Sequence record: MK250019.1
Strand: one strand, 5' to 3'
Length of the DNA stretch: 63,688 nt
Shown: positions 13,490 through 33,053 of the stretch, in pieces
Position numbering within the stretch: the stretch's first letter is position 1
Layout: the number at the start of each line of letters is the position of its first letter
Notes under the pieces: generated by a model
What the model was told of the DNA's origin: nothing
Seen by the model: only the letters and a program-made list of their open reading frames with translations
Database searches by the model: none
Position numbers and translations under genes: made by a program

Positions 13490-13492
13490 CTT

Positions 13493-15671: not shown

Positions 15672-16355
15672 TTACTCTAATATTTTACATTCCTCTTCTG
15701 TATATCTCTTATGTAATTCAGTTAACCACCATTTTGTTTTAACTTTTACTTTAGGCATTCGTTGTCCCTTTAATAATGTTGATCGCCTAATTACTACACC
15801 TTCTTTTATATATGGATATTTACAATTAGTTTCAGTCCAATCATTATTTTGTATATCTTTAATAAAGTCATTAACTAATGGTCCTGTATAAACTAATTGT
15901 GGTAATTCAATACCACAATCTTTAAATAAATCCATATAAATTTTTGGTTCAATATATCCTTTCTTTTTTATAAATACATCAATTAATGCAAGATGCATAT
16001 TATCTTTATCTTCTAATGAATGAAATCCTGCGAAACTATGTTCTCCATACCATTCAAAGAAAAATGTAATTTCATCAACGTCAGAGAATACATCTTTCTT
16101 ACCTCTATGTTGTTCAACAATATTAGATAATATAGTTTCATAATTATGTGATTTAAAATAACGTACAGCATCACCAAATTGTTCAGATGACTCATCTACC
16201 ATACATTTTCTTGAACCAAAATTTGTGAACATCTTTTTCTTAACAGAATATTTTGCACAGAAATTTTGTCCATCTAATTTATTAAATGCCCATACTTGTT
16301 CACCTAGTAATTCAGTATTATATTTTATATTATCTATTGAATCGTAATGTTTCAT
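15672..16355 (-). CDS. ATP-dependent RNA ligase (Rnl-type adenylyltransferase domain)
   Basis: Motif I NKLDGQN, III FFEWYG, IV EGVVIR, V KVKVK. Confidence 0.75.
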   Translation of the reverse strand: MKHYDSIDNIKYNTELLGEQVWAFNKLDGQNFCAKYSVKKKMFTNFGSRKCMVDESSEQFGDAVRYFKSHNYETILSNIVEQHRGKKDVFSDVDEITFFFEWYGEHSFAGFHSLEDKDNMHLALIDVFIKKKGYIEPKIYMDLFKDCGIELPQLVYTGPLVNDFIKDIQNNDWTETNCKYPYIKEGVVIRRSTLLKGQRMPKVKVKTKWWLTELHKRYTEEECKILE

Positions 16356-18604: not shown

Positions 18605-18614
18605 CTTTTTATCA

Positions 18615-19339: not shown

Positions 19340-19697
19340 CTTCATTTAAAATAAATTTCGTACAATCTCGCGTTTTATATAGAAATTCTTTTGCTGCTTC
19401 ATATGATAAAAAATAATTTGAAACTAATTCTTTATCAATTCCAGTACATACTATCTGGTTATCAGTTTTCATTAAAAAATCGCGGAAAAATGGCAAAATA
19501 CTGAAGTAATTCCAGTAAATTTTGTAATATTTTATATGTTTTCCTAAACCTATATCAAATTCATCAACATATTTAATAGTATACTCAATTGGACCAAAAA
19601 TATTAAATATTTTCTTAATTTGTATATCTCTATCATATGTTAATGATATTAGGTACATATAAAAAAATGTGAATATTAATATATTTGTAATCATCAC
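19326..19697 (-). CDS. Hypothetical membrane-anchored protein
   Basis: Hydrophobic N-terminus. Confidence 0.55.
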   Translation of the reverse strand: MMITNILIFTFFYMYLISLTYDRDIQIKKIFNIFGPIEYTIKYVDEFDIGLGKHIKYYKIYWNYFSILPFFRDFLMKTDNQIVCTGIDKELVSNYFLSYEAAKEFLYKTRDCTKFILNEDEHF

Positions 19698-19836
19698 AAT
19701 TCATTTTCTAAATTTTCTAATTTTATCTCTAACAACCTTATCCTGTTCTCTTGTGTTAAAATAATAGTTTTTAACTTATTAATAGAATCAATAATTTCAT
19801 TTATCTTATCATATAATTGCTTTTCTTGTTCATTAC

Positions 19837-20148
19837 TCATATTATTATCTTATCATTTAAAATATCATCAACTATATTAACTAATATAGGACAAACACAA
19901 TTATAATAATCAAAGTCTTTTTCAAAAGAAATATCATTATTAGAAAAATCCTTATATAATTGTAAAAGAATAAATGCAACATATTTATTAAATGGACGAT
20001 CAGTGATATTATATGATGAAATATTACGTAATATTTCATATACACTTTCTGCATCCATATAAGTATCCAACTCTTTTACGTATTTAACTATATTATTTTG
20101 AATCTGAATAATATAATTATTTATATTTGAATTATTTATAATTATCAT
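19837..20148 (-). CDS. Hypothetical protein
   Basis: 103-aa ORF. Confidence 0.5.
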   Translation of the reverse strand: MIIINNSNINNYIIQIQNNIVKYVKELDTYMDAESVYEILRNISSYNITDRPFNKYVAFILLQLYKDFSNNDISFEKDFDYYNCVCPILVNIVDDILNDKIII

Positions 20149-20153
20149 ATTTC

Positions 20154-20366
20154 TTACTCTTCAATAAATTTTTTAATTGTTTTTGCCATATCAATAATTC
20201 TATCAAATTCATATCGGTCTCTATTAGCCTTCTCTGAATTTGCCCAATACATTGTATAAATCAATGCACGATCAGCTGCAGGTAACTTACCAAAGTTATC
20301 GTCATTGATTAATTCATCAAATTTATTGTTCTTAAACTTAATATTTTTAGTTTCATTTGTATTCAT
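20154..20366 (-). CDS. Hypothetical protein
   Basis: 70-aa ORF in operon spacing. Confidence 0.5.
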   Translation of the reverse strand: MNTNETKNIKFKNNKFDELINDDNFGKLPAADRALIYTMYWANSEKANRDRYEFDRIIDMAKTIKKFIEE

Positions 20367-20388
20367 ATAATTTATATATCAATTTATA

Positions 20389-20601
20389 TTATTTGTTTTC
20401 ATTATTATTAATAACTTTAAACTTATCAGTATCAGGAATAATGGCTAAACTACCCCATGTTCCATGAAGCTGTCCAATACTATCGATAAATTGAACAACA
20501 CCTTCACGTCCAATATATGAGTTTACAACTGTATCATAACCACAATCATCAACCCATAAAATTTTAATAGTATCTCCTATCTTTACGTTTTCTTGTTCCA
20601 T
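20389..20601 (-). CDS. DUF4314-like small protein
   Basis: GVVQFIDSIGQLHGTWGSLAIIPDTDKF pattern. Confidence 0.6.
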   Translation of the reverse strand: MEQENVKIGDTIKILWVDDCGYDTVVNSYIGREGVVQFIDSIGQLHGTWGSLAIIPDTDKFKVINNNENK

Positions 20602-20624
20602 AACAAATCTTATTTAAACATTAT

Positions 20625-20656
20625 ATAACAAAGATACATATTTTATATTAAAAAAG
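20625..20656 (-). promoter_or_regulatory. Bacteroidota-type promoter
   Basis: CAAAGATA at 20629-20636. Confidence 0.6.
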
Positions 20657-20683
20657 AAAGGATACTAACTTAAATTAGTATCC

Positions 20684-21070
20684 TTAATATATTTTCCACT
20701 ATTCAAAATGATTTCTTGTATCTAAATAAAATAAATTAGTTTCATTCTTATATGCTTCCTGTTCAAATGATATATTTCTATATGCTTTATGCGAAAATCT
20801 ATCTTTTGTAAATAATACACGCCATAACCATTCAAAGAAATATATTATATAGAATATAATACCACCTATATACTATTGAAGACACAATGGTAAAAAACAT
20901 GCAAAATCTTTCATTTGTTCAGTATGTATAGACTCATGATTTAATATTTTTTCTTTATATCTAGGAATCTATAATTTATATGCATATTCTTTTCTGACAA
21001 ATAATGTACCGAAAAGATTAATAGCAATAAAACCCTATACAGGTATAATACTATTATAAACAATTTTCAT
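20684..21070 (-). CDS. HExxH-containing membrane-associated protein (128 aa, 4 TAG)
   Basis: MKIVYNSIIPV(Q)GFIAINLFG...NHESIH...AYRNISFEQEAY, a pattern typical of Bacteroidota and their phages. Absent from the ORF track. Confidence 0.7.
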
Positions 21071-21099
21071 TTTATTAACTTATTCTTTTAAGTATTTAT

Positions 21100-21834
21100 T
21101 TAATCATTATTAATACGTTCTGTTTTTAACTCAATAATTATATCTTCTTTTATAAATAAAACAGTATTATTATCAATATTTCTATATTCAATATTTTTAA
21201 TTACATTCACAAAATTATGAACAAAAGTATTTAATATAGATATATCTGTATCTTCTATTCTAAATATAAATTTAGATAATTCTGGATATGCTAATGATAT
21301 TTCTTTCTTTGTAAAATATTCATCTCCATTTATTAAACCTAAACATTGTCCAGATTGAAATGCAATTAATTTTAATATATCTTCTTTTGACATATTATTA
21401 TTTAATGTTGTGAAATCTATTGTTGTTAAATCAATATTTAATAATGTATTTAATCTACAATCAAAGTCACTACGTAATGCGAGTTTTACTTCTGATCTAT
21501 ATTGAGATCTAGGTAAATGAGATAAAATAGAACGTATAGAGCGTACTATCTTTAATGGTATATTGCGCTTTACATTTTTAGTAATTAATAAAGGAGTATT
21601 CTGATGATGTAAAGAATATGTATTTTTAATGGCATTATTTAATTCATCTTTTGTTCCTTTATAACAATTAGAAATAATACCATCATCAATAGTTATTAAA
21701 TTTCTATTTTCATTTTTATCAGATGAACAAAATATCTTACATTCATTTAATGACGGTAATTTATCTACAATATATGCTATGTCTATATCAGTTGAATCAG
21801 ATGAACCATATATATAATTTCCATATATTTCCAT
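21100..21834 (-). CDS. Pol-beta superfamily nucleotidyltransferase
   Basis: IYGSSDSTDIDIAYIV (GS-x-DxD). Confidence 0.6.
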   Translation of the reverse strand: MEIYGNYIYGSSDSTDIDIAYIVDKLPSLNECKIFCSSDKNENRNLITIDDGIISNCYKGTKDELNNAIKNTYSLHHQNTPLLITKNVKRNIPLKIVRSIRSILSHLPRSQYRSEVKLALRSDFDCRLNTLLNIDLTTIDFTTLNNNMSKEDILKLIAFQSGQCLGLINGDEYFTKKEISLAYPELSKFIFRIEDTDISILNTFVHNFVNVIKNIEYRNIDNNTVLFIKEDIIIELKTERINND

Positions 21835-21839
21835 TTTAA

Positions 21840-22106
21840 TTATTCTAAATTAATTTGCTTAAATATTAAATAATTCTCTAAATCTATAAGAGTCTGTAAC
21901 GATTCATCAAAGTATTGATGATCATAATTTTCATCATTTCTTGCATGCAAATCTATTAAAGCTTCATGAAATCTTGAATCAGGATATTTCTCAAAATATT
22001 TTTTCAAAATTTCCAAAATTTTCATATTACTTTCATAACGTTTACTTCTGTAATACTCAAACATCTTCTGCTCTGACTCATTTCTTTTTATATCATTCTC
22101 TACCAT
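21840..22106 (-). CDS. Hypothetical protein
   Basis: 88-aa ORF. Confidence 0.55.
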   Translation of the reverse strand: MVENDIKRNESEQKMFEYYRSKRYESNMKILEILKKYFEKYPDSRFHEALIDLHARNDENYDHQYFDESLQTLIDLENYLIFKQINLE

Positions 22107-22129
22107 AATTTATAAAATTAAATTAATAG

Positions 22130-22993
22130 TTATATACTTATATCTTTTATTTCTCTATCTAATGATATACATTTAGGATCTATATTTTCATATGTAAAAA
22201 CACTATTCTATCCTTTTGGATCATCAAAGAATCTATACATAGTTGCTTTATTTCCTTCAATATAAGAACCTCTTGTTTTTAAATCTATCTTTAATATTAC
22301 TGCATTATTTATATTTTGTTTATTCTTAAATAAATCTTTTGCATAACTTTCCAATTTATTATAATTATATTTTAAATAAAAATAAACTCTATCTGGATAA
22401 TTATCACCATTAAATTGCTTAGATCTCGGTATTAACCCATTTTTCTATATTTTCTAATATGTTTTATAATCAGTTATATGGTATAAAATACCATCACATT
22501 CCTTATATACATAATCAGTTAATTCATATATAAATTTTGGATGTAACATAAATACATAGTTATCATTCTATCGTTTTTTTACCGCAATAAAATATCCTAA
22601 ATTATAAATAATAGATTCTAGATTTATTAATGCATCTTTATTATATTCATCATCATAATCATCACAATATATATAAAAATATAATAATGGTGTTTTATCT
22701 TTCTATAATGGATTATAATCAATTCCAGCATGATGAATAAAACCATCAAAATATTTTTTTAGTTTAGATAATGCTTTATTCGGATCCATTGTATGTAATA
22801 AACCTTCATACAAATAATTTTGTTCACATTTTTTTAAGTAACTATATTGACATGTATCTTCTATACCATATTTTAGTTGATTATATGACTAAAACCATAT
22901 ATTATCTTTTGAATATTCTCTTAATGCATTATCATAATAATTAAATTTCATTTCATATAAGGTTTTGCCTATCAATCTATCATAACTATCCAT
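22130..22993 (-). CDS. ADP-ribosyltransferase-fold / Tpt1(KptA)-like protein (287 aa, 6 TAG)
   Basis: C-terminal LYHITD....KI(Q)KNGLIP...RVYFYL...VILKID...FFDDP....VFTYENIDP..I. Absent from the ORF track. Confidence 0.6.
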
Positions 22994-23132
22994 AAAATTA
23001 AATATTTATAAAAATTTAATTATTTATTACATTTATCGAATATATTGCAAACCTTACTAATAGTTTTCAAAAAATTATTAATAAAAAATAGGTTATGAAA
23101 TACGAGATTTCATAACCTATTAATACTTCATG

Positions 23133-23218
23133 CGGAAGCTGTAGGATTCGAACCTACGGGCCGTCTCCGGTCTCGGGTTTTCAAGACCCGCGCAATCGAC
23201 CAACTCTGCCAAACTTCC
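23133..23218 (-). tRNA. tRNA-Ser(TGA)
   Basis: Type II cloverleaf, CGGGT-CTTGAAA-ACCCG, G73. Confidence 0.93.
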
Positions 23219-23359
23219 AAATAAAAATTAGGATTTATATTCTGTGAGAATCCTTTAACTCAGTACCAATACGATGGTCTCCAAGACTTTCCATTAAATA
23301 AATTTAATGTTCTTGTAGTTACGATTCTATATCATAATAATATAGACTATTAATAATTG

Positions 23360-23430
23360 TTGCAACTAACGGAATCGAACCGCTTACTCTCTCGCATGAT
23401 GAGAATGTGTTGCCATTACACCAAGATGCA
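23360..23430 (-). tRNA. Atypical tRNA with CAT anticodon
   Basis: Cloverleaf with loop ATCATGC and a T-T mismatch in the acceptor. Confidence 0.6.
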
Positions 23431-23552
23431 TGCAGAGTTTTATCGATCGCTTATTATCTCTGTCATTCATATTTCCCCATTTATGATATTACTTTATAGA
23501 TACACAATCGCGAACAGTTATCTATATTCATAAAATAAACGTATCATACTAG

Positions 23553-23627
23553 TTGCGGAAGGGTGGGACTCGAACCCACGATCTTTTGCTTATGAGACAA
23601 ACGAGATACCAACTTCTCTACCCCGCG
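23553..23627 (-). tRNA. tRNA-Met(CAT), initiator-like acceptor
   Basis: CGCGGGG with C1xA72; 2-nt bulge in the acceptor; lacks the three G-C pairs in the anticodon stem. Confidence 0.75.
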
Positions 23628-23971
23628 ATATATAAAAACATAAAAATAATAATGAATTCATAGATGGATTCCTGACTACCATCAAACCTCATTACATATT
23701 AAGCACATTATTCAGTCACTACAAGTTAGTTCATGACGCTAACTTTTTATGTAGGAAGGATTGATTACCTTCAAAGGCTACAGACATCATTCCATTAAAA
23801 CGATTTGACCTTTCTTACGTCACTCACAGTTGGCCAACTGTGGTTATTTTAACCTTATGCTTCTTAATATTGATTACTCTAAATCATATCTTTTCAAATA
23901 TAACCTAAATGCCTTATTTGCTGTCCACAAATTATTCAGCAATATAAAAACATTATTAAGTTATGTTATTG

Positions 23972-24157
23972 AGCTCCGAGTCGGATTCGAACCAACGACC
24001 TGCTCATTGCTCTATGCTGAAGAAACGAACTTCAGATATTATAAATTTAATTCTCATTAAATTTTTGCATTAACCACTATGCTACATAGAGTTTAATTTT
24101 TTTCAATCTTTATTGATTGTAAACAAGTGAGCTGCACTACCACTGTGCTATCGGAGC
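23972..24157 (-). tRNA. tRNA-Thr(TGT) interrupted by a 114-nt intron (24009-24122)
   Basis: GCTCCGA/TCGGAGC acceptor; GCTCA-CT-TGT [intron] AA-TGAGC. The intron holds a tRNA mimic at 24009-24091. Confidence 0.85.
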
Positions 24158-24237
24158 ATAAATTTTATTAACTTATTATTTATCTAATTTACTTTAAAAA
24201 TTAATAATAAATCAAAAAAATATTTCATAATTATTTG

Positions 24238-24318
24238 TACCTTCACTCGGACTCGAACCGAGACGTAATTAAACCTAGCTCCTTAGGCTAGTGACTATAC
24301 CAATTCGTCTATGAAGGT
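24238..24318 (-). tRNA. tRNA-Leu(AAG)
   Basis: CTAGC-CTAAGGA-GCTAG, variable arm, A73. Confidence 0.85.
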
Positions 24319-24393
24319 ATTAAAATTAGTTTCATAAAGAAACTTTTTATTTAATAACGTAAATTTAAAATAATTTATTTTTAACTATTTTAG

Positions 24394-24467
24394 TAGTGCG
24401 TACCGGGATCGAACCGGTGAAATACCAGCGTGAAAAACTGGCGACTTAACCACTTGTCAAACGCACC
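24394..24467 (-). tRNA. tRNA-Glu(TTC)
   Basis: CCAGT-TTTTCAC-GCTGG. Confidence 0.9.
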
Positions 24468-24489
24468 AAATTTTTTTAAAATACATTAT

Positions 24490-24518
24490 ATTATATATAA
24501 CTTTTTAAATAAAGTCTA
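24490..24518 (-). promoter_or_regulatory. sigma70-like promoter TAGACT-N17-TATAAT
   Basis: Inside the tRNA array, upstream of tRNA-Glu. Confidence 0.6.
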
Positions 24519-24550
24519 TATATTTATTAAAAATATTTTCAAAATATTTG

Positions 24551-24654
24551 TGGGAACAACAGGATTCGAACACTGTGACGTAAGATCATTTCAACCGGTT
24601 TGTAAATACAACCCACTTACCATGGGTCTCTCACACCAACGAGAAGGTATTCCC
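24551..24654 (-). ncRNA. Degenerate tRNA-like RNA (GTA loop, long extra arm)
   Basis: GGGAATA/TGTTCCC acceptor, ACCCA-TGGTAAG-TGGGT, bulged T arm. Confidence 0.5.
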
Positions 24655-24659
24655 AAATA

Positions 24660-25310
24660 TTATAATTTATTTATATATTCCTTTAATTCTTTCGCTTTAT
24701 ATGGTAATTCATATTTTTTACACCATTTCTTTATAGCATTACCAGAAATACCATATAATCTTCCAATATTTTCAAATGTAATATATTTCCTAAATAATTC
24801 TATTAACTCTTCTTTTGAAGGAATAATATAATTTTTATTGGTTTTTATATTATCAGATATTTTATTATACTAACTAATTATAGAATTGTCTTTAAATTTA
24901 TATATTAAATTATTAACAGCATTATCATCTTTTATAATTTCTGTTGGACATTCTAGTAAATTACTATGTATTTCTCGATGGCAATTAGAACATACTAATA
25001 CACATTTATCTAATTCTGTTTTTACTTTATTCCAACTTCTAGTATAACCTCTACTTCCTATTGCAAAATCTTTCTATTCAGGATTAATATGATGAAATTC
25101 TAATGCTGAAATACATTTATTATAACCACAACATTGACATCTATTCCCTTTATATGCTAATGCTAATAGTTTTATATGATCTCTTCGTTTCTAAACATAT
25201 TCAGACTAACATTTCATGCATTTCCAATGAATTGAATTATCATAAAAATACTATTTAAATAAAGTATTCCCATGCTTTTTGCATATACGATATTCTTTTA
25301 TATCACTCAT
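24660..25310 (-). CDS. HNH homing endonuclease with C-terminal HTH (216 aa, 5 TAG)
   Basis: CQCCGY...LEFHHINPE(Q)KDF...KCVLVCSNCHREIH; starts 4 nt after tRNA-Asn. Confidence 0.85.
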
Positions 25311-25314
25311 ATTG

Positions 25315-25388
25315 CGCTTCGGAATGGACTCGAACCATTGACTTTCTGATTAACAGTCAGACGTTCTAACCAACTGAACTACCGAAGC
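25315..25388 (-). tRNA. tRNA-Asn(GTT)
   Basis: Canonical cloverleaf. Confidence 0.95.
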
Positions 25389-26056
25389 AAATATTGAATA
25401 GTTTATCTTCGGACACTATTCATAAATTATTAAAATTCAGTCATATACTTACCGAGAATTATATATGCACTATATCATGAAAGTTTATTCATAATGGCAC
25501 TACTTATCATGATTAAAACCATATTCAACTTTGGTAACTAATATTCATATAGGAAAAATATCTTACCATCTCATCTTAAATATATGGTTGAATAACATAT
25601 ATTCATAATTATTTTTTAGAACCTATATTAAAATCAAAAAAATGCATATCATTATTATAAGAAATAATTAAAACTTATAATAAAGTCTCGAGCTATGCGC
25701 AATATCTTTATAAAAAATGTAAATATAAAACAGATAATATTGAATAACAAATTCTTTTTATAACTGTTTCATTATTTAAATCTACATCTTTTGTCCTATC
25801 TCTCTATATATGTAAATCATAAAGAAGATTATGTGAACGCCATTCATTTATTAAACTATACATACTTCTTTTATGAATTATATAACTATTATCACATCTC
25901 TATTTAATACTATTAATAACATATTTCATGTTCTTAATAGATTTTATTTGGTAACTATCAATAATACATATATTATCTTTACTAATAATTACTTCTGGAT
26001 TAATCATAAATATATTTTTAACTATTTCATATATTTATTCATAATCAACATTATTG

Positions 26057-26129
26057 TGACTCTGGTAAGATTCAAACTTACGACTCACTCCTTAGAAGGG
26101 AGTTGCTCTATTCACTGAGCTACAGAGCC
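26057..26129 (-). tRNA. tRNA-Arg(TCT)
   Basis: ACTCC-CTTCTAA-GGAGT. Confidence 0.92.
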
Positions 26130-26160
26130 AAATAACAACATAGATATGTTAAATAAGTTG

Positions 26161-26234
26161 CGGTACGTACGAGATTCGAACTCGTGACTTCTACAGTGAC
26201 AGTGTAGCGCTCTGACCAACTGAACTAACGCACC
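26161..26234 (-). tRNA. tRNA-Asp(GTC)
   Basis: CTACA-CTGTCAC-TGTAG, G73. Confidence 0.95.
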
Positions 26235-26464
26235 AAATTAAAAAACAGAAGTCATTTATATATTAAGTATTTGAGTTATTAAATATATTCCAAAAATATA
26301 TTAATCACTTTGTAAACATTATTATAAAAATAAGTTTGCTGTATTGACTTCCATATTCATAAACAAATCTCATTAAACACTTACATTTCTTACTAATAAA
26401 AGTCTCATCGTAAGTCAAATACTTCAATTATTATTTATGAATTATTATATTATTTAAATTTGTG

Positions 26465-26539
26465 TGGGCCCAGTAGGACTTGAACCTACGACCTTCAGAT
26501 TATGAGTCTGCTGCTGCTAACCGTCTGAGCTATAGGCCC
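26465..26539 (-). tRNA. tRNA with CAT anticodon, Ile2-like (or elongator Met)
   Basis: GGGCCTA/TGGGCCC acceptor resembles bacterial Ile2. Confidence 0.85.
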
Positions 26540-26606
26540 AAATAATATATTTTTATATTATGTAATTAAAATATCTATATTATTAATATTAAAATTTAAT
26601 TTATAG

Positions 26607-26679
26607 TGTTCCGTACGAGACTCGAACTCGTTACCCCGATATTAAAAGTATCGTGCTCTGCCAGATGAGCTAACGGAAC
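26607..26679 (-). tRNA. tRNA-Lys(TTT)
   Basis: CGATA-CTTTTAA-TATCG. Confidence 0.92.
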
Positions 26680-26689
26680 CGCATATTAA

Positions 26690-27508
26690 TTACATAACCT
26701 AATATAATTTATCTAATCGTTCATTATATCTCCAAAATTGACAATGTAATTTATTTATAATATTATTCTAACGAATTATATCTTTATCTGATAAAATATT
26801 ATTATATACATCTTTATAATGTTTAGGTTCATCATATTCAAATACAATATTTTTTTCTTTATCATATCCATCAAGAAAATAACCTAAAATCTCACATTCA
26901 CCGCCATTTCCGTAATACTATAAATTCCAGTTATTTTCTTTATTTAATTTTTCTATATATTCTCCAGAATTTTTATTAAATCGTGGATTGTGAAATCCTT
27001 TATTCTTTTTCAAATATTCAATTGCACCTAATCGCTATTTATATTTATGATCTTCTGTATGATGTGTACCTAAATTATAGGGTATATTTTTACCAGACAT
27101 ATAATTCTATCTAATTGTAATTGATTGCTATTTTACGCTATCACTTGTTTTTATAGTTAAACCTTTATTCCATGCAATATGTCCTTTTGTTGCTCCATTA
27201 TTGCCATGATGTATTTCTCTATTAGGATTCATATGACAATATCTTTCATGATATTTTATACCATAAATTGAATATAAATTATTACAAAACTAACAATTAA
27301 CTTTCTAACAATTAATTTTCTTTATCTTAAAATCTTTCTATTTAAACTATAAATCAATATTATATTTTTCAACTATTATTTTTAAATAATTTATATTTCC
27401 TGAATTCTAATAACAATTTAACTATCGCAAACAATCATTATATGATGTACAATTATTTAATTTCTAAATAATTTCATTATCACTAATCTATTTAATATTA
27501 TTTTTCAT
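26690..27508 (-). CDS. Vsr/EDxHD-like PD-(D/E)XK homing endonuclease (272 aa, >10 TAG)
   Basis: AWNKGL and HHTEDHK NUMOD-like segments; GYFLDGYDKEKNIVFEYDEPKHY. Absent from the ORF track. Confidence 0.75.
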
Positions 27509-27533
27509 GTTTTCAAAGAACTAAATACATAAT

Positions 27534-27562
27534 ATTATATGTAAAACTTAAAATAAAGTCTA
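27534..27562 (-). promoter_or_regulatory. sigma70-like promoter TAGACT-N17-TATAAT
   Basis: Upstream of the 27508 endonuclease. Confidence 0.6.
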
Positions 27563-27593
27563 TTTTTAATAGATTATTTTTTAAATTATTTTG

Positions 27594-27667
27594 TTGGGTG
27601 GGTGAGACTTGAACTCACGACCTCTTGCTTATCAGGCAAGCTATCTAACCAGCTGATATACCACCCA
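27594..27667 (-). tRNA. tRNA-Ile(GAT)
   Basis: CTTGC-CTGATAA-GCAAG. Confidence 0.92.
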
Positions 27668-27673
27668 AAATTA

Positions 27674-27934
27674 AAACAAGTAGATTTACGAGACACAGCT
27701 TCTTCACCCTTTATAAAGGAAACTCGCTATTAGGCACTTGCGCTGTTTTACGAAGTTGTTGTGTGTCAACTTATGGCTTCTCACGAAATTTGCTGCTCTT
27801 CACATCTATGATCGAAATCAAACCAATTCTTTTCAATAATTGACCTGTAACCCTTATCAGTTCTTCAGTATATAACATAAGCTAGCATTACTATACACTT
27901 ACTCATTATTATAATCAGAAGTCTATACTTGTTT
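27674..27934 (-). ncRNA. Candidate structured ncRNA closed by a terminal stem
   Basis: AAACAAGTA...TACTTGTTT ends; GC-enriched and non-coding; lies between two tRNAs. Confidence 0.4.
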
Positions 27935-27939
27935 TTTAG

Positions 27940-28022
27940 TAGAGATAAAGGGACTCGAACCCTTACACTTTAACAGTATATGCTCCTAAGGCATACGTGG
28001 CTACCAATTACACCATATCTCT
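27940..28022 (-). tRNA. tRNA-Leu(TAG)
   Basis: TATGC-CTTAGGA-GCATA, variable arm. Confidence 0.92.
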
Positions 28023-28028
28023 AAAATG

Positions 28029-28182
28029 TGGACCCTCGTGGAATCGAACCACGACCTCTGGATTGTCTCTATAAATGGAATCGAACCATTAATAATAACC
28101 ATTAATATTATAGAGATTGATTTAATACAGTTTACTCTGTTAATTCAGTCCAGCGTACAGGCACCAGCCATACGCAAGGTCC
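28029..28182 (-). tRNA. tRNA-Phe(GAA) interrupted by a 79-nt intron (28065-28143)
   Basis: GGACCTT/AGGGTCC; CTGGA-CT-GAA [intron] AA-TCCAG. The intron holds a minimal tRNA mimic at 28065-28116. Confidence 0.85.
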
Positions 28183-28191
28183 ATTTATGTG

Positions 28192-28271
28192 TTGCGGGTC
28201 TTAGAGTCGCACTAAGTATCGCATAGCTTATGAGACTAGCATGATTTATATATCTGTTTCACCCCCCCGCA
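28192..28271 (-). tRNA. Atypical tRNA with CAT anticodon
   Basis: GCGGG/CCCGC acceptor, loop CTCATAA, T loop TGCGACT, enlarged D loop. Confidence 0.55.
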
Positions 28272-28443
28272 ATATTATATTATTATTTTTTAAATAGGCC
28301 ATTTTCACTGGTTATATTTAAACTATTCCATTGTCCTCAGCTATCTAACGTTCTTTTTCTTTCTAACCCAAATGATTAATTTTAAGGTAATTACGCTATT
28401 TAATAGCGTCACTGAGAGTTGTTTAGAACCTATACTTTATTTG

Positions 28444-28510
28444 TCAGATTTAGAGATTCGAACTCCTTAGACTTATTCCCGCGCGTCCTATTCGTCAATC
28501 TACCCATCTG
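28444..28510 (-). ncRNA. tRNA-like remnant
   Basis: CAGAT/ATCTG ends and a TTCGAAT loop; other arms are weak. Confidence 0.3.
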
Positions 28511-28549
28511 TAGAAATACAGTTCCCACACTGTAAGTCACCTGTAATTG

Positions 28550-28620
28550 TTGGACTAGTAGGACTCGAACCTACTCAAATAGCGTCAAAGGCTATTGTGC
28601 TGCCATTACACCATAGTCCA
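28550..28620 (-). tRNA. tRNA-Gln(TTG)
   Basis: ATAGC-CTTTGAC-GCTAT. Confidence 0.93.
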
Positions 28621-28637
28621 GTATTTATATCACATAG

Positions 28638-28874
28638 CGGTTGTAATTGGATTCGAACCAATAATCTACCCACGACCTTGGGTCATTCTACGAGTAAACG
28701 ATAATTTTTTTATTCATTATAAGCAAATAATTATAAAATCAATAACGGTATAAGAGCTTAAGATTAATACCATTCGATCCGCAAACATCTCATATTAATT
28801 ATTATAATATTCGAAATAAATATTCATTTTAATTACCAGTTTTAACTACTCCACCTGTTTTGAACTATACAACC
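28638..28874 (-). ncRNA. tRNA-framed RNA with about 170 nt inserted in the D loop
   Basis: GGTTGTA/TACAACC-G acceptor, GTTC...GAAT D stem, ACCCA-AGGTCG-TGGGT, ATTGG-TTCGAAT-CCAAT. Confidence 0.55.
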
Positions 28875-28897
28875 ATATTATTAAAAATAGACGTTCC

Positions 28898-28975
28898 TAT
28901 CTGATTTGCACAGCACCCTATACCATAATGATATAGATTCTAACTATTAAACTATCAGAACATTAAATATACTTA
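28898..28975 (-). pseudogene. Degenerate tRNA-like sequence
   Basis: GTTCT/GGAAC ends, CTATA/TATAG stem, TGCAAAT loop. Confidence 0.3.
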
Positions 28976-29014
28976 ATAACTAGTATATAAAAATATATCC
29001 TCTATTTTTATTTC

Positions 29015-29425
29015 TTAATTTGATGGATGATAATAATCTTTCCAATTATTAAATGTATTCTTTATTGATAAATTTTGTAAATATTCAACAGAATAACATT
29101 TATTAGTATGTATTATTCTATGATGATTTGGACATACAATAATTAAATTTGAAACATCATCAGTTCCACCATTACATTTCTCAATTATATGATGAATATC
29201 ACATGTTGATTCATTCCAACCACATATTGCACAACCTATTTTAGAACGATTTAAAATCTTTGATATTGTTCTTTTTGAACAATCTAATATAGAATTTATT
29301 TCTTGTTCTTTTGAATGTTTTCTATGTTGTTTACATTCATCACATCTTATATATCTATCTTTACGGATTGTCTTATTAGTTAAAAAAGATTTTCCACATA
29401 TTTCACATATATACTAATATTCCAT
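29015..29425 (-). CDS. HNH endonuclease (136 aa, TAG at codon 4)
   Basis: CAICGW...CDIHHIIEKCNGGTDDVSNLIIVCPNHHRIIH; directly after tRNA-Tyr. Confidence 0.85.
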
Positions 29426-29432
29426 AATAATG

Positions 29433-29515
29433 TGGGTGAGGCAGGACTCGAACCTGCGAAGTCAAATGACAGCTGATTTACAGTCAGCCCCCTTTGCCGC
29501 TCGGGACACTCACCC
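29433..29515 (-). tRNA. tRNA-Tyr(GTA), canonical type II
   Basis: GCTGA-CTGTAAA-TCAGC, long variable arm, A73. Confidence 0.95.
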
Positions 29516-29850
29516 AAAATTAATGAAATATTTCGAAGAAATTGCATCTTCTAATAATCTTACAGCTTACCCTTTAGGTTTTTTAATAGCTTGCCTGTTA
29601 CTTCACAGGAACAAAATATTTCATTAAAAATTACCCGAAACATTCATTGTCGTCACAGTCACATCTATAGGATTTAAAAATAGATTCTAACCAGGAAGAG
29701 TTTGCTCTACATCATCAGATTTATTTTATATTTAGACTTAATAATAAACCCTACATACTTACCATATAACTCTTTTATTTAATAGTCATATAAATACACT
29801 GTCTAATAATATAAGTATACAACTATTACTGTAATGTTTCGCACAAGACG

Positions 29851-29924
29851 TGGAGGTATGGAGACTCGAACCCCAGACACCCTGCGTGCAAAGCAGGTGC
29901 TCTAGCCAACTGAGCTATACCCCC
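29851..29924 (-). tRNA. tRNA-Ala(TGC)
   Basis: G3:U70; CCTGC-TTTGCAC-GCAGG. Confidence 0.95.
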
Positions 29925-29996
29925 AATATTTCTCTGTTTTAAGAGTAATATTTATATTTGAAAAACATTATATTGCCTATTCAAATAATAAAAAAT

Positions 29997-30227
29997 TGTT
30001 CACATAGGCGGATTCGAACACACCTTCTTAGATTTCATTGTGCCATTCCAATTTCATTCTTCACCTACTCTGGACATCAAGACCTTTTCTTTTGGCTTCT
30101 ATCGGACACATTATTTTTATAATCAAATAATGGAGGTCCTGCACTTTTATTCGCATTTCAACTTCACTACTCTCTTCTTTTACCTCCATCAGCATTCAGT
30201 TTTACCATAGCTAAACTATATGTGAAC
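29997..30227 (-). ncRNA. tRNA-framed 231-nt RNA with a large insert replacing the anticodon arm
   Basis: GTTCACATA/TATGTGAAC acceptor, D arm AGTTT/AAACT, TTCGAAT T loop, internal helix ATGGAGGT/ACCTCCAT. Confidence 0.65.
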
Positions 30228-30233
30228 ACATGG

Positions 30234-30293
30234 TAGGTTATGAGGAACTCGAATCCCCGTACTAATAAGTTATTAGTATCCAAAATATAACCT
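30234..30293 (-). ncRNA. Minimal tRNA-like RNA
   Basis: AGGTTAT/ATAACCT, one internal hairpin, GGGGA-TTCGAGT-TCCTC. Confidence 0.45.
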
Positions 30294-31228
30294 TATAAAG
30301 TATTAATATCAACTTCTTTATGTTCTAATATTAATTTAATATTATAACCTAATTTTTTATATTCATAAAATTTATCTTTAATTTCTTGCAGATTTAATGT
30401 ATAGTTTGATTTTATTTCTATAATAGTATTTGTTGATGGTAAATAAAAATCAGGAATTGCAATTCTATATATTTTCTTTATTGAATCAAAATATTTTATA
30501 TGTAAATTTTCAACTTCATATAAAATTTTCTATTCATCTAATTTTTTTGCATAATCCTGTTCATATGAACTTCTCAAATATACATTTTTATTATCCCATG
30601 TTTTATACCAACCTGCTTTATATATTGATTTATTGAAAATATTACTATGATCTAATCTACCTGTTAATACAGCATTTTGTGTAAACATCTCTGGTTCAGA
30701 ACGTGTAGGAATATTTAAATATTTAAATATTTTCTATGTTAAATTATGCCCATTTTTATAACCATACATTTCTGCAATCTATAAACCTGACATTTTTTTA
30801 TTCCAATATAAATCGTATAATTTCTATCTAATTATATTAAATTCATTTTCAACATCAATAGTTCCTAATTTATTTTTATCAAACCCAAAATATTTTATTA
30901 ATGTATTAAACTACTTATAGTTATGTATTTGACAAAAAGGATTCTAACATTGTTTTTGATATTTGTAATACGTTCGTCCACAAATTTTACATTTACACTA
31001 ATTTTGGGGTAATGTCTATTTACATGACATACATAAACATTCTTTTTTTGATAATCTTTTATTAACATAAATAAGTTTTCCACATATATTACATATCGTT
31101 TCCTTTTGCTAATTATTATCATCATTTTTAGTTGAAAATGATCTTGCGCATTTTGAACAACAAAAACGACCACTTCCATATGTTCCATCATGTTCTTTTC
31201 CACAATTTTCACAAATCATAGTATACAT
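30293..31228 (-). CDS. Zn-finger plus TnsA-like PD-(D/E)XK homing endonuclease (311 aa, multiple TAG)
   Basis: CENCGKEHDGTYGSGRFCCSKC; LRSSYEQDYAKKLDE...PDFYLPSTNTIIEIKS. Confidence 0.8.
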
Positions 31229-31637
31229 AATTCTTTATTATATTTATCTACACTTATAATAGAAATAGTTCAAATTTTATAAAAAATAGTATACTGCTTT
31301 CCCAAGTGGTATACTATGAAATAATTCACAAATCCGATTTTATGAATTTAAAAATTAAATAGTTAATTAGGGTGGATTTGCACTTCCCTTACTCCATAGC
31401 TAAATGTTAATGATGGACCCTTCTTACTAATGAATAAAAGAAAATTGCGCAAGTTTTTATTCATTAATATGTTTAGTTCTACATAACGTAGTTCTCTACT
31501 TACCGTTAAACTTCGTTACTATTTAATTAAAAACGTTTAAAAATATATTCAGAAATTTAATATATATTCGCCTCGACGATACTATCTGAACATAGAAGGT
31601 ACATCCTTTATACATACTAAATCATATTTTTAAATTG

Positions 31638-31801
31638 CGGGAATAGAGGGAATCGAACCCACGCCCAGAGATTAGCTACATAAATTGGATTCGAACCAAT
31701 TAAACTTTATAAAGTATGATACCCAACAGCATTATGTAGTTTAATTTAATCAGGTTGTTTCCTGTATACAGTCTCTTGCTCGACCTTCGAGCTATATTCC
31801 C
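31638..31801 (-). tRNA. tRNA-Tyr(GTA)-like, short variable loop, interrupted by a 93-nt intron (31674-31766)
   Basis: GGGAATA/TATTCCC-G; AGAGA-CT-GTA [intron] AA-TCTCT. The intron holds a tRNA mimic at 31675-31739. Confidence 0.8.
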
Positions 31802-31805
31802 AACT

Positions 31806-31995
31806 TTTGCATTAAGGTCAGCAAACCACACATCTCGCCGTCATATAAGCATCCACGATTACTATCGTTCCATGTATACAACCAATCATGCCTGTGCGAC
31901 TATTTGTTCTATTCGGCTCGTGGCGATATTCTTTTCGAAAGCAATAGCAAATATTAAAAGGACTTTAATATTCTATAATATCGCCTGATGCACTT
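31806..31995 (-). ncRNA. Candidate structured ncRNA
   Basis: GC-enriched; TGCAT terminal stem and GGCGATATT/AATATCGCC helix. Confidence 0.4.
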
Positions 31996-32247
31996 TGGAC
32001 AAGCAGTATAATATAAGAAATCTTATATATAGCCTGATATATTTCAATCATATTTTTCTTTGGCAGCATCATTCTATAAATTCATATAATTATTGTTTTC
32101 TTCTTCACATAAGTAAAATACTTATGAAGTTACTTTTCAATAAAGTTCATAGTATATCTGATTAACTTTTCAGTAACAGAAACATTTATTATATGAATAA
32201 CATTTATATTTGTCTATCAAAATTTCAAAGAACAATATATTTTTTAA

Positions 32248-32400
32248 TTAACAATACAAAGATACATCTTTATTTTGAATTAAAAAAATATTCATTGAAA
32301 TTTTTGAAATATTTTTTTGTTTATTATCAATATGTCAAAGAACTAAATGTTTGTTATTTTATTAACAACACAAAGATACATAATATATTTCAAATAAAAA
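32248..32400 (-). promoter_or_regulatory. Tandem Bacteroidota-type promoters
   Basis: CAAAGATA at 32257-32264 and 32371-32378, pointing into the tRNA array. Confidence 0.6.
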
Positions 32401-32426
32401 AATAAGTCTATAAAAAATTGATATTT

Positions 32427-32675
32427 TTATTTAAGTTTTATAATTGTATCTTCTTTAATAGAACGTCTAATCCATCTCATTAGAATTATTGCTCTATCAT
32501 AATGTGGTAAGAATGAAGCAGTTTCACCTACATCATGTTTATCTGATAAATCGATTTCAAACTGATATACATGATTATCAGTTGATGTAATATTATAAAC
32601 TGCAATTCCTCCAGCATTCATACAAACAAGGTCTGCTGCACCTTTAACTAAAATTTTTAAATCAATGTTTTCCAT
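32427..32675 (-). CDS. Conserved phage hypothetical protein
   Basis: 82 aa ending ILMRWIRRSI. Confidence 0.65.
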   Translation of the reverse strand: MENIDLKILVKGAADLVCMNAGGIAVYNITSTDNHVYQFEIDLSDKHDVGETASFLPHYDRAIILMRWIRRSIKEDTIIKLK

Positions 32676-32699
32676 TTTTAATTAATTTTCTTTTTTTAG

Positions 32700-32772
32700 T
32701 TGGGGTGGTGGGAGTTGAACCCACTACCAGAATTTTATAAGAATTCCACTCTAACCGTTGAGTTACACCCCA
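32700..32772 (-). tRNA. tRNA-Ile(TAT)
   Basis: GAATT-CTTATAA-AATTC. Confidence 0.85.
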
Positions 32773-32962
32773 ATATGGGATGTTCCTAAATATAATACAA
32801 CATTATATCATTAAACATATAGGAACATAATTTCTATTGTTAATCCTATATATAATAATGTATATAAGATCAACAATTATAATATTCGATGCTTATGTAT
32901 ATGTCGTATTAAATTTGTCATAACTTTATTCTTATAAAATTTGTTTGTATTCTTTTAATTTG

Positions 32963-33053
32963 CACACAGAGAAGGATTCGAACCCTCGAACAGACTGTTA
33001 AATCCGTTATTGGTTTTGGAGACCAACTGCATCAACCACTCGCACATCTGTGT
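32963..33053 (-). tRNA. Serine-type tRNA body with CCA (Trp) anticodon
   Basis: TTGGT-CTCCAAA-ACCAA, about 7-bp variable arm, G73. Confidence 0.8.

What the first reader, a model, noticed from the sequence alone, without database searches (positions are those of the whole stretch)
28065..28143. Phe intron: minimal 52-nt acceptor plus T-arm mimic
Seen: TCTCTATA...AATGG TTCGATT CCATT-TATAGAGA-C with no anticodon arm. It shares a CTCTAT/ATAGAG acceptor core with the Thr intron, suggesting common origin and reduction toward a minimal RNase P substrate (inference). This is the only Phe tRNA in the window, so splicing may be needed for function.
Basis: partly seen in the sequence, partly recalled or inferred. 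Interest (0 to 1): 0.7.

Follow-up and report, generated by a model that had tools for sequence, protein, structure and literature searches.

The report
Megaphage tRNA-Phe intron with tRNA mimic
The only phenylalanine tRNA gene of the gut megaphage Lak-A2 is split by a 79-base mobile intron that carries a miniature tRNA look-alike; this kind of intron was published in 2019 but never explained, and it may be cut out by the cell's ordinary tRNA-trimming enzymes.

Summary
The window is Prevotella phage Lak-A2. Minus-strand 28143..28065 is a 79-nt intron between nt 36 and 37 of the phage's only tRNA-Phe(GAA) gene. Intron-less alleles with identical exons fix the junction as GAA|AA. The intron has two parts. 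The first is UUA, a 4-bp hairpin and an AU-rich, leader-like linker. The second is a 52-nt tRNA-like module: an 8-bp acceptor stem, a short GG-loop hairpin, a canonical T arm and a terminal C. There is no anticodon arm. The same plan recurs in 13 non-identical introns (Phe, Thr, Gly, Lys and a 'Tyr' that is really Asn), with compensatory changes in all three helices.

This intron is already listed in Devoto et al. 2019 (Table S6, 'no hit in Rfam', 'enigmatic'). The shared architecture, the corrected junctions and the linkage to a homing endonuclease are additions.

It is not a group I intron, not a BHB intron and not a known ribozyme. The 3' splice site lies 14 nt after the T loop in every member, in the same N73-C|A context in which every genuine Lak tRNA gene ends. 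My best model (about 0.4) is excision by host tRNA end-processing nucleases, with sealing by phage Rnl2-type ligases. The 5' cut is unexplained, and splicing itself is not shown.

The parts
28144..28182 (-). tRNA-Phe(GAA) 5' exon: acceptor 5' strand, D arm, anticodon stem 5' strand and loop nt 32-36 (CUGAA)
   Evidence: Sequence. Identical to the 5' part of the intron-less genes in G001 and L207.
28065..28143 (-). 79-nt intron between nt 36 and 37
   Evidence: The X19 contig skips exactly these bases. Intron-less DNA alleles exist. Listed as A1/A2 tRNA_Phe_GAA intron in Devoto 2019 Table S6, offset by 1 nt.
28127..28143 (-). Intron 5' module: UUA lead (28143-28141) and hairpin P1, ACAG (28140-28137) / loop AGUAAA (28136-28131) / CUGU (28130-28127)
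   Evidence: P1 is kept by compensatory changes across the family: ACAG/CUGU, CAGG/CCUG, CAAG/CUUG, CAAUC/GAUUG.
28117..28126 (-). AU-rich linker AUUAAAUCAA, resembling a tRNA 5' leader
   Evidence: The conserved AAAUYAAW motif precedes the acceptor in all members.
28109..28116 (-). tRNA-like module, acceptor 5' strand UCUCUAUA (8 bp including a -1:73-type pair)
   Evidence: Covariation at acceptor positions 3, 4 and 7.
28091..28108 (-). Central segment with a short hairpin UAAU-GGUU-AUUA. It is a possible D-arm remnant; the GG loop recurs in all members.
   Evidence: Sequence. Compared with the Lak-B 7-bp hairpin with GGAU loop. The D-arm role is inferred.
28074..28090 (-). T-arm mimic AAUGG / UUCGAUU / CCAUU
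   Evidence: The G53:C61-type pair and UUCG are invariant. Other stem pairs covary (Lak-B: AUUAG/CUAAU).
28065..28073 (-). Acceptor 3' strand UAUAGAGA plus the terminal unpaired C (28065). The 3' splice site follows this C.
   Evidence: The distance from the end of the T loop to the 3' splice site is 14 nt in all 13 family members.
28029..28064 (-). tRNA-Phe 3' exon: A37 A38, anticodon stem 3' strand, 4-nt variable loop, T arm, acceptor 3' strand and A73. C74 at 28028 follows; no CCA is encoded.
24009..24122 (-). Paralogous 114-nt intron in tRNA-Thr(UGU). Its tRNA-like part is what ARAGORN calls 'tRNA-His(atg)'.
31675..31767 (-). Paralogous 93-nt intron in the gene published as tRNA-Tyr(GTA). 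The intron-less allele reads CUGUUAA, so the gene is tRNA-Asn(GUU)-like.
30293..31228 (-). Free-standing homing-endonuclease-like gene (Zn ribbons plus a Vsr/PD-(D/E)xK domain; TAG read as Gln). It is a paralogue of the gene linked to the Phe intron in Lak-B.
15672..16355 (-). Rnl2-family RNA-ligase-like gene, one of several in the genome and a candidate sealing enzyme

Best explanation
The element is a member of a Lak-megaphage family of small, mobile, protein-dependent tRNA introns. Each is built as N | WUA, a hairpin, a leader-like AU linker, a tRNA-like module (acceptor with an extra -1:73 pair, a GG-loop hairpin and a T arm), a terminal C, then | (U)AA.

Shown:
- the anatomy;
- the exact junction;
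- family-wide covariation;
- presence/absence polymorphism with identical exons;
- linkage to a homing-endonuclease gene in Lak-B;
- the absence of group I, BHB and known ribozyme features.

Inferred mechanism:
1. The tRNA-like module makes the precursor look to the host like a tRNA nested in a tRNA.
2. A host RNase Z-type enzyme cuts after the first unpaired base behind the 8-bp stem. That base is the terminal C, so the cut is the 3' splice site.
3. Host RNase P cuts at the 5' end of the module.
4. A further endonuclease cuts at N|WUA, three bases before hairpin P1. It may be RNase E/G-like, because position +2 is always U. This cut frees the 5' exon.
5. All these cuts leave 3'-OH and 5'-phosphate ends. 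These are the substrates of the phage's Rnl2-type ligases, which would reseal the anticodon loop.

At the DNA level the intron spreads or is lost precisely. It probably moves together with free-standing homing endonucleases that populate the tRNA array.
For: - Junction and intron-less alleles.
- Shared plan and compensatory pairs in the acceptor, T stem and P1 across 13 introns of five tRNA types.
- The 3' splice site is always 14 nt after the T loop. Phe keeps this distance through a different extra base pair.
- All 31 ARAGORN calls in Lak-A2 end N73-C and are followed mostly by A. None encodes CCA. This is the same context as the intron end...N-C|AA.
- ARAGORN's 3' end for the Thr inner tRNA (24009) is the last intron base.
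- The phage has no RNase P RNA, RNase Z-type, RNase E/G, EndA, RtcB or Rnl1 gene. Bacteroides thetaiotaomicron in the control panel has RNase P RNA, Lactamase_B_2 and RNase_E_G.
- The phage has several PF09414 ligases and a CCA-adding enzyme.
- Selection on the exons: a compensatory C:G to U:A change in the exon T stem between the Lak-A2 and Lak-B1 intron-bearing genes. It is also the only tRNA-Phe gene.
- Mobility: the intron, a variant 3' exon and a 288-aa endonuclease gene are present in B1, B3, B5, B6 and B9 and absent from B2, B4, B7 and B8.
- From established knowledge: acceptor + T-arm minihelices are RNase P and RNase Z substrates, and host RNase BN/Z matures CCA-less T4 tRNAs.
Against: - No spliced Phe junction was seen in three RNA libraries that carry the intron-plus allele. 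Contigs can miss it, and mature tRNAs are poorly captured.
- The one junction contig (X19) most likely comes from an intron-less strain.
- RNase P plus RNase Z alone would leave 27 intron bases on the 5' exon. The nuclease for the 5' splice site is a guess.
- The module is AU-rich and thermodynamically weak (z = -1.2), and an alternative hairpin competes with the T arm.
- Rnl2-type ligases prefer nicked duplexes and may serve only for repair.
- No intron of any organism is known to be removed this way.
Confidence: 0.4

Rival explanations
1. Dedicated phage machinery. An unrecognised Lak-encoded protein, or one of the abundant intergenic RNAs, uses the hairpin and the tRNA-like module as handles, makes both cuts and perhaps also the ligation.
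For: - Most Lak genes are hypothetical.
- The hairpin loop (ARUAAA) and the linker are conserved without an obvious role in the host-enzyme model.
- The 5' splice site has no known host determinant.
- Very abundant RNA contigs lie in the tRNA array at 27670-27844 and 29675-29856.
Against: - No candidate was identified.
- EndA, RtcB and Rnl1 are absent.
- The endonuclease gene family next to the introns has a Vsr / I-Bth0305I-type DNA-nuclease fold, not an EndA fold.
- The Lak-A2 Phe intron has no adjacent ORF.
Confidence: 0.22
2. Not spliced. The element is a selfish or protective DNA insertion. For example, it may interrupt the target site of the array's own homing endonucleases, or the released tRNA-like RNA may itself be the product. 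On this reading the interrupted tRNA-Phe is non-functional.
For: - No spliced RNA was seen.
- No known splicing system is present.
- Intron-less alleles circulate.
- The intron is linked to an endonuclease gene in Lak-B.
- Stand-alone tRNA-like modules occur elsewhere, for example at 30232-30300.
Against: - The exons stay intact and identical to the intron-less genes.
- A compensatory pair change keeps the exon T stem.
- It is the only tRNA-Phe gene in an AT-rich genome.
- Five different tRNAs are hit at the same loop position, with ends that would restore a normal 7-nt loop.
- The 14-nt ruler has no meaning for a DNA-only element.
Confidence: 0.18
3. A new small self-splicing or self-cleaving RNA. 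The hairpin, linker and T-loop module would form a catalytic fold that cuts at its own ends.
For: - The cleavage sites lie at the exact ends of a conserved, structured unit.
- T-loop modules are common tertiary building blocks.
- The sequences are unusually conserved across cohorts.
Against: - No Rfam ribozyme or group I match, even at E <= 10 on a 701-nt search.
- The last intron base is C, not G, and the exon ends vary (A, U, C).
- The conserved unpaired positions are almost only A and U.
- At 79 nt it would be far below any self-splicing intron known.
Confidence: 0.07
4. An archaeal/eukaryal-type intron cut at a bulge-helix-bulge motif by an EndA-like enzyme and joined by RtcB.
For: - The anticodon-loop position.
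- Bacteroides gave a sub-threshold signal for PF01974 and has RtcB in the control panels.
Against: - For Phe and Gly, the only helix of 4 bp or more that links the two splice-site neighbourhoods is the anticodon stem itself.
- The position is 36/37 (35/36 in Asn), not 37/38.
- There is no EndA or RtcB in the phage.
Confidence: 0.03

Closest known systems
Lak megaphage tRNA introns (Devoto et al. 2019, Nat Microbiol, PMC6784885; Table S6, Fig. 4)
   Same: It is the same object. The Phe(GAA) intron of A1/A2/C1 is listed there with 'no hit in Rfam'. The paper notes that the introns are identical across cohorts and that the Thr intron may encode a tRNA.
   Different: - The paper gives tRNAscan junctions one base off for Phe.
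- It calls the 93-nt intron host 'Tyr(GTA)'.
- It lists a single intron for the Lak-B genomes.
- It describes no common architecture, no mini tRNA-like module in Phe, Gly or 'Tyr', no endonuclease linkage and no mechanism.
Bacterial and phage group I introns in tRNA anticodon loops (for example cyanobacterial tRNA-Leu(UAA), Azoarcus tRNA-Ile)
   Same: Both are inserted in the anticodon loop of bacterial-type tRNA genes. Both are mobile, patchily distributed and often linked to homing endonucleases.
   Different: - 79 nt against about 200 nt or more.
- No P3-P9 core.
- No terminal G.
- No U at the 5' splice site.
- No Rfam match.
Archaeal/eukaryal tRNA introns (BHB motif, EndA, RtcB)
   Same: Both are short, protein-dependent introns in the anticodon loop that can transpose between tRNA genes.
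   Different: There is no bulge-helix-bulge, the position differs, and the phage has neither enzyme. The host is a bacterium.
tRNA-like processing signals: MALAT1/mascRNA, plant mitochondrial t-elements, mitochondrial tRNA punctuation
   Same: In both, an embedded tRNA-like fold with acceptor, T arm and elbow is used as a cutting signal for RNase P and RNase Z inside a longer RNA. This is the proposed logic here (from established knowledge; not tested).
   Different: Those signals define RNA ends and are never followed by re-ligation of the flanks. Here the flanks must be rejoined to make a tRNA.
T4 tRNA biology: host RNase BN/Z matures CCA-less T4 tRNAs; Pnkp/Rnl1 reseals anticodon loops cut by PrrC
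   Same: Both involve phage tRNA genes without CCA that depend on host 3' processing, and phage RNA ligases able to close a broken anticodon loop.
   Different: In T4, ligation is repair of damage with 2',3'-cyclic phosphate ends. Lak has Rnl2-type ligases but no Rnl1-type ligase.
Collaborative homing of an intron with a free-standing endonuclease (T-even phage Aeh1 mobE / nrdA intron); endonuclease-rich tRNA regions of T5-like phages
   Same: In both, an endonuclease gene lies beside the intron rather than inside it. Intron, flanking exon variant and gene are inherited together, and tRNA arrays are full of HNH and Vsr-like genes.
   Different: The target site and the cleavage are untested. 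In Lak-A2 the Phe intron has no adjacent endonuclease gene.

Membership tests
Lak tRNA intron set (Devoto 2019) | Sequence identity to the published A1/A2 tRNA-Phe(GAA) intron, in the anticodon loop of a Lak tRNA gene | tested here: met
   The window is 100% identical to MK250019.1. The Table S6 sequence equals 28064-28142, one base offset.
Lak tRNA intron set (family architecture defined here) | WUA + hairpin + AAAUYAAW linker + CU-start acceptor + UUCG T arm + terminal C; 14 nt from the T loop to the 3' splice site | tested here: met
Group I intron | Conserved catalytic core (Rfam RF00028), length of about 200 nt or more | tested here: not met
   79 nt. No hit at E <= 1 (18 kb search) or E <= 10 (701 nt search).
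Group I intron | U at the end of the 5' exon and G as the last intron base | tested here: not met
   The exon ends in A and the intron ends in C.
BHB (archaeal/eukaryal) tRNA intron | Two 3-nt bulges separated by a 4-bp helix that joins the splice sites | tested here: not met
   For Phe, the anticodon stem is the only helix linking the two neighbourhoods.
BHB (archaeal/eukaryal) tRNA intron | EndA-family endonuclease and RtcB ligase available | tested here: not met
   Absent from Lak-A2, B1, B2 and C1. The host genome was not examined.
tRNA (Rfam RF00005) for the inner element | Full cloverleaf with an anticodon arm, detected by the tRNA model | tested here: not met
   No RF00005 hit on 28065-28116 even at E <= 10, and ARAGORN is silent. 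Only the acceptor, a short hairpin and the T arm are present.
RNase P / RNase Z minihelix-type substrate (mascRNA-like tRNA mimic) | Coaxial acceptor + T stem (12-13 bp) with a canonical T loop (U54 U55 C56 R57, G53:C61) and an unpaired 3' base | tested here: met
   8 + 5 bp, UUCGAUU loop, closing G:C pair, unpaired C.
RNase P / RNase Z minihelix-type substrate (mascRNA-like tRNA mimic) | Actual cleavage by RNase P and RNase Z at the module's ends | not testable with these tools
   Needs an enzyme assay or end mapping. The read data were contigs only.
Small self-cleaving ribozymes (hammerhead, twister, pistol, hatchet, HDV-like) | Match to the family covariance model | tested here: not met
Intron with free-standing homing endonuclease (collaborative homing) | Endonuclease gene adjacent; intron, exon variant and gene co-inherited; intron-less alleles in relatives | tested here: inconclusive
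   Met in the Lak-B clade, with a DNA-nuclease fold. Not met in Lak-A2, where tRNA-Leu follows directly. The cleavage site is untested.

The most novel reading that the evidence does not exclude
These are the first introns whose splice sites are set by a built-in tRNA mimic. Ordinary tRNA end-processing nucleases (RNase Z and RNase P, plus one more cut) would excise them, and a phage RNA ligase would rejoin the tRNA. That would be a third, previously unknown route of tRNA splicing, operating in a bacterial host.
Probability: 0.3. Interest if true: 0.85.

Novelty: already known. Interest (0 to 1): 0.6.

Why it matters
Introns in phage tRNAs were reported once, in 2019, and left as 'enigmatic'. 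This analysis turns that enigma into a bench test. A 157-nt transcript, two host nucleases and a phage ligase would decide it, together with compensatory mutants of three helices whose base pairs are now known.

If the tRNA mimic guides excision, a bacterium's housekeeping tRNA enzymes can carry out splicing. That would be a new mechanism. It would also suggest a simple origin for tRNA introns, as a tRNA gene nested in another, and offer a compact removable RNA cassette for engineering.

If the intron is not spliced, Lak-A2 lacks a working tRNA-Phe, and the element would be a selfish or protective insertion in a homing-endonuclease battlefield.

The work also corrects annotation:
- the Phe junction is GAA|AA;
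- the published 'Tyr' host gene is Asn-like;
- five Lak-B genomes carry a Phe intron that was not counted.

Tried and rejected
- **Rfam.** Scans of 18 kb at E <= 1 and of 701 nt at E <= 10 gave nothing for the intron.
- **Splicing enzymes.** EndA, RtcB, Rnl1, RNase P RNA, Lactamase_B_2 and RNase E/G are all absent from the phage.
- **BHB test.** Negative for Phe and Gly.
- **Anticodon-intron pairing.** The hairpin 5' strand looked complementary to loop nt 32-34 in Phe, Thr, Gly and Asn. I dropped the idea because the Asn variant L161 changes CAGG/CCUG to CAAG/CUUG. That change keeps the hairpin but not the anticodon pairing, and Lys needs a wobble pair.
- **Extending P1 by pairing WUA with the linker.** Not conserved.
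- **Folding energies.** Not significant for the intron alone.
- **RNA evidence for splicing.** Inconclusive. Only contigs were available. The single junction contig comes from a run with no intron k-mers at all, so it is most likely an intron-less strain.
- **The 311-aa neighbouring ORF as an RNA splicing endonuclease.** Rejected. Its fold matches I-Bth0305I, Vsr and TnsA, which are DNA nucleases.
- **Formal pair counting.** MAFFT put Phe and the hairpins in different registers, so I did not use the alignment. I parsed the helices by script instead. That parse uses pairing to find P1 and the acceptor, so only the T-stem counts are free of that bias.
- **False leads.** ARAGORN 'introns' in L145 (4102-4267) and L181 (1770-1928) are not members of this family.
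- **Pattern scans.** Most of the 120+ metagenome hits and all 71 hits in cellular genomes were false. None of the 71 closes an acceptor + T arm.
- **Masked stretches.** The N runs at 52582-60496 were left alone. The public Lak-A2 record was passed whole to ARAGORN and to a motif script, but no letters or hits from those places were read or reported.

Full report
**Identity of the window.** Bases 27500-29000 are 100% identical to Prevotella phage Lak-A2 (MK250019.1), a 541-kb gut megaphage. Lak-A1 and Lak-C1 are 99.4-99.9% identical there, and the Lak-B genomes about 82%. The window has about 25% G+C and carries a minus-strand array of tRNA genes between small ORFs that need TAG read as Gln. 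N runs lie only at 52582-60496 and were not touched.

**The observation.** ARAGORN and Rfam see no tRNA at 28026-28182. Read by eye, the minus strand is a complete tRNA-Phe(GAA) interrupted after the anticodon. The 5' exon is 28182..28144 and ends CUGAA. The 3' exon is 28064..28029 and begins AAUCCAG.

The 79 bases between them are:
- UUA;
- hairpin P1 (ACAG / AGUAAA / CUGU);
- the linker AUUAAAUCAA;
- a 52-nt module: UCUCUAUA, 18 nt with a small GG-loop hairpin, AAUGG-UUCGAUU-CCAUU, UAUAGAGA and a final C.

The limits are exact. A contig from an RNA-library run (X19) joins 28064 to 28144 with no ambiguity. Thirty-four viral contigs carry the joined anticodon arm. Among them, the 553,716-bp Lak genome G001 and contig L207 have a gene identical to the Lak-A2 exons joined at GAA|AA. 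Run X19 shows no intron sequence at all, so its contig is best read as an intron-less strain and not as spliced RNA.

**Already published.** Devoto et al. 2019 report 'enigmatic' introns in Lak tRNAs. [quoted passage not shown] Later Lak papers only repeat that the introns exist, and a text search found no mechanistic follow-up. The tRNAscan junction in the paper (GAAU|...|AUCC) is one base off the junction shown by the intron-less alleles.

**A family with one plan.** I collected 13 non-identical introns:
- Phe of the A, C and B types;
- Gly(UCC), two variants;
- Thr(UGU), two variants;
- the published 'Tyr', four variants, including a 141-nt Lak-B form that sits in a different tRNA gene;
- a Lys(UUU) intron in a 37% G+C tRNA-array contig (L145).

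All read as follows: exon | WUA, a 4-5-bp hairpin with a 6-nt A-rich loop, AAAUYAAW, an acceptor starting CU, a hairpin with GG in its loop, a 5-bp T stem with a UUCG loop, the acceptor 3' strand, C | (U)AA exon.

Compensatory changes occur at:
- acceptor positions 3 (C-G, A-U, G-C), 4 (U-A, C-G) and 7 (A-U, G-C);
- four of the five T-stem pairs, while the pair that closes the loop stays G:C as in real tRNAs;
- all four P1 pairs.

The Phe orthologues alone differ by two double changes in the T stem (AAUGG/CCAUU against AUUAG/CUAAU). The composite pattern is expected 0.00 times by chance in the window. It closes into an acceptor + T arm in none of 71 pattern hits in 185,579 cellular genomes.

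The acceptor core shared with Thr therefore reflects common descent. The Lak-A2 Phe copy is the most reduced member.

**A ruler at the 3' splice site.** From the end of the T loop to the 3' splice site is 14 nt in every member. Phe reaches this with an outer extra pair (U:A), the others with an inner one, so the stack is always 8 + 5 bp followed by one unpaired C. In tRNA numbering this is a tRNA with a -1:73 pair and C74.

All 31 ARAGORN calls in the Lak-A2 record end N73-C. They are followed by A (23), U (6) or G (2). None encodes CCA. So the intron end plus the first exon bases (...N-C|AA) copies the end of a genuine Lak tRNA gene. ARAGORN's 3' end for the inner Thr 'tRNA' is the last intron base.

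The 5' splice site is always three bases (UUA or AUA) before P1, whatever the exon base. It lies at 36/37 in Phe, Thr, Gly and Lys but at 35/36 in the 'Tyr' gene. The intron, not the host tRNA, therefore defines both ends.

**What it is not.**
- Not a group I intron: too short, wrong terminal bases, no Rfam hit.
- Not a known small ribozyme.
- Not a BHB intron: for Phe the only helix linking the two splice-site regions is the anticodon stem.
- The phage encodes no EndA, RtcB or Rnl1.
- The inner module is not a tRNA by RF00005.

**Is the gene meant to work?** It is the only tRNA-Phe gene in the genome. The exons are intact and identical to the intron-less alleles. Between the intron-bearing Lak-A2 and Lak-B1 genes, the exon T stem changed C:G to U:A and the anticodon stem changed C-G to U-G, both keeping the fold. 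The whole pre-tRNA folds with all four outer arms intact (z = -2.65).

Against this, no spliced junction was found in three RNA libraries that carry the intron. This is weak evidence, because only contigs were available.

**Mobility.** Each Lak genome has its own subset of introns:
- G001 lacks the Phe and 'Tyr' introns but has the Gly one.
- In the Lak-B clade, B1, B3, B5, B6 and B9 carry the intron, a divergent 3' exon and a 288-aa ORF immediately downstream. B2, B4, B7 and B8 carry none of the three.

That ORF's paralogue in the window (30293-31228) lies about 400 nt downstream of the intron-bearing 'Tyr' gene. It folds with pLDDT 88.6. Its C-terminal domain matches the I-Bth0305I homing endonuclease, Vsr and TnsA, and PHROGs endonuclease and resolvase families. 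At least 600 relatives exist, sitting in tRNA arrays of other large phages. It is therefore a DNA homing endonuclease, not a splicing enzyme. The pattern resembles co-conversion in collaborative homing, although the target site is untested and the Lak-A2 Phe intron has no adjacent ORF.

**Most likely mechanism (inferred).** Lak-A2 has no RNase P RNA, no RNase Z-type gene and no RNase E/G gene. Host enzymes must therefore trim its roughly 34 CCA-less tRNAs, as host RNase BN/Z does for T4 tRNAs (established knowledge), and the phage CCA-adding enzyme must finish them. The same enzymes will meet the inner mimic.
1. RNase Z cuts after the first unpaired base behind the acceptor helix. Here that is the terminal C, which is exactly the 3' splice site.
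2. RNase P would cut at the 5' end of the module.
3. A third cut at N|WUA is needed. The invariant U at +2 and the hairpin just downstream recall RNase E/G sites, but this is the weakest link.
4. All these nucleases leave 3'-OH and 5'-phosphate ends. This chemistry suits the phage's Rnl2-family ligases and does not suit RtcB.

I put this model at about 0.4. The rivals are an unknown phage factor (0.22), no splicing at all (0.18), a new ribozyme (0.07) and BHB/EndA (0.03).

**Verdict.** The feature is real, precisely delimited and more than chance. It is the published Lak tRNA-Phe intron, so as an object it is already known. The additions are the modular tRNA-mimic architecture shared by five tRNA types, the 14-nt ruler and the tRNA-end mimicry at the 3' splice site, the corrected junctions, the Asn identity of the 'Tyr' host, the uncounted Lak-B Phe intron and its endonuclease linkage. 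The mechanism remains open but can now be tested directly.

Noticed in passing
window 31630-31793 (-); L027 about 1540-1620: The intron-bearing gene published as tRNA-Tyr(GTA) is probably tRNA-Asn(GUU). The intron-less allele in Lak genome G001 has the loop CUGUUAA. The gene has a short variable loop and G73, and the intron then ends on the family's usual ...AG-C. The intron therefore sits at 35/36, inside the anticodon.
   Followed up: yes
L001 2952-3037 (-) and 1997-2863 (-): Lak-B1, B3, B5, B6 and B9 carry an 86-nt Phe intron plus a 288-aa Vsr-like endonuclease gene. The 2019 paper's Table 1 lists only one intron for the B genomes. B2, B4, B7 and B8 lack both and have a different 3' exon.
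   Followed up: yes
window 30232-30300 (-): A stand-alone tRNA-like element starts right at the stop codon of the endonuclease gene 30293-31228. It has the acceptor AGGUUAU/AUAACCU, one hairpin and a T arm. It is followed by an encoded CCA, the only CCA after such a fold in the genome.
   Followed up: partly
window 28644-28703 (-): An acceptor + T-arm minihelix-like element (T arm AUUGG-UUCGAAU-CCAAU, identical to that of the 93-nt intron) lies just upstream of tRNA-Gln. It gives a weak RF00005 hit of 24.7 bits.
   Followed up: no
window 27670-27844 and 29675-29856: In the size-fractionated RNA library X18, contigs here have depths of about 13,000-14,000, against about 750-1,400 for neighbouring contigs. 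These may be abundant small RNAs between tRNA genes. There is no Rfam match and no significant fold (z = -0.5 for 27668-27938).
   Followed up: partly
window 28293-28433: A 140-nt intergenic stretch upstream of tRNA-Phe is 87-96% identical to crAss-like phage genomes (MT835539.1, cr124_1, cr7_1), which are otherwise unrelated to Lak. No feature is annotated under the match in the two NC_ records, and MT835539.1 has no annotation.
   Followed up: no
whole Lak-A2 record; window tRNA array 17968-33053: Every tRNA gene ends N73-C74 and none encodes CCA. Position 75 is A, U or G. A conserved C74 without a CCA is unusual and suggests a special 3'-maturation rule.
   Followed up: partly
window 24660-25310, 26690-27508, 29015-29425 (all -): The tRNA array is interleaved with HNH-type endonuclease-like ORFs rich in in-frame TAG codons (5, 14 and 1). 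In Lak-B the first of these follows the intron-bearing Asn gene directly.
   Followed up: partly
L002 2246-3172 (-): Lak-C1 has a 308-aa ORF with the same CENCGK...GSGRFC zinc-ribbon motif inserted between tRNA-Gln and tRNA-Phe. It is absent from Lak-A2.
   Followed up: no
L145 3882-3968 (-): An 87-nt intron of the same family sits in a tRNA-Lys(UUU) gene on a 37% G+C contig that carries 21 tRNA genes (QXGG01210416.1). The family therefore reaches beyond the roughly 26% G+C Lak genomes.
   Followed up: partly
window 29925-29960 (-), upstream of tRNA-Ala 29850-29924: The genuine tRNA-Ala has a leader of the form AUA + hairpin (CUCU/UAAAAC/AGAG) + AAAUAUU, much like the intron's 5' module. This hints that the intron began as a leader-plus-tRNA unit nested in another tRNA gene.
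   Followed up: no
window 11080-11340 (-) and 57480-57640 (-): Further odd tRNA-like folds with good T arms that ARAGORN does not call in bacterial mode.
   Followed up: no
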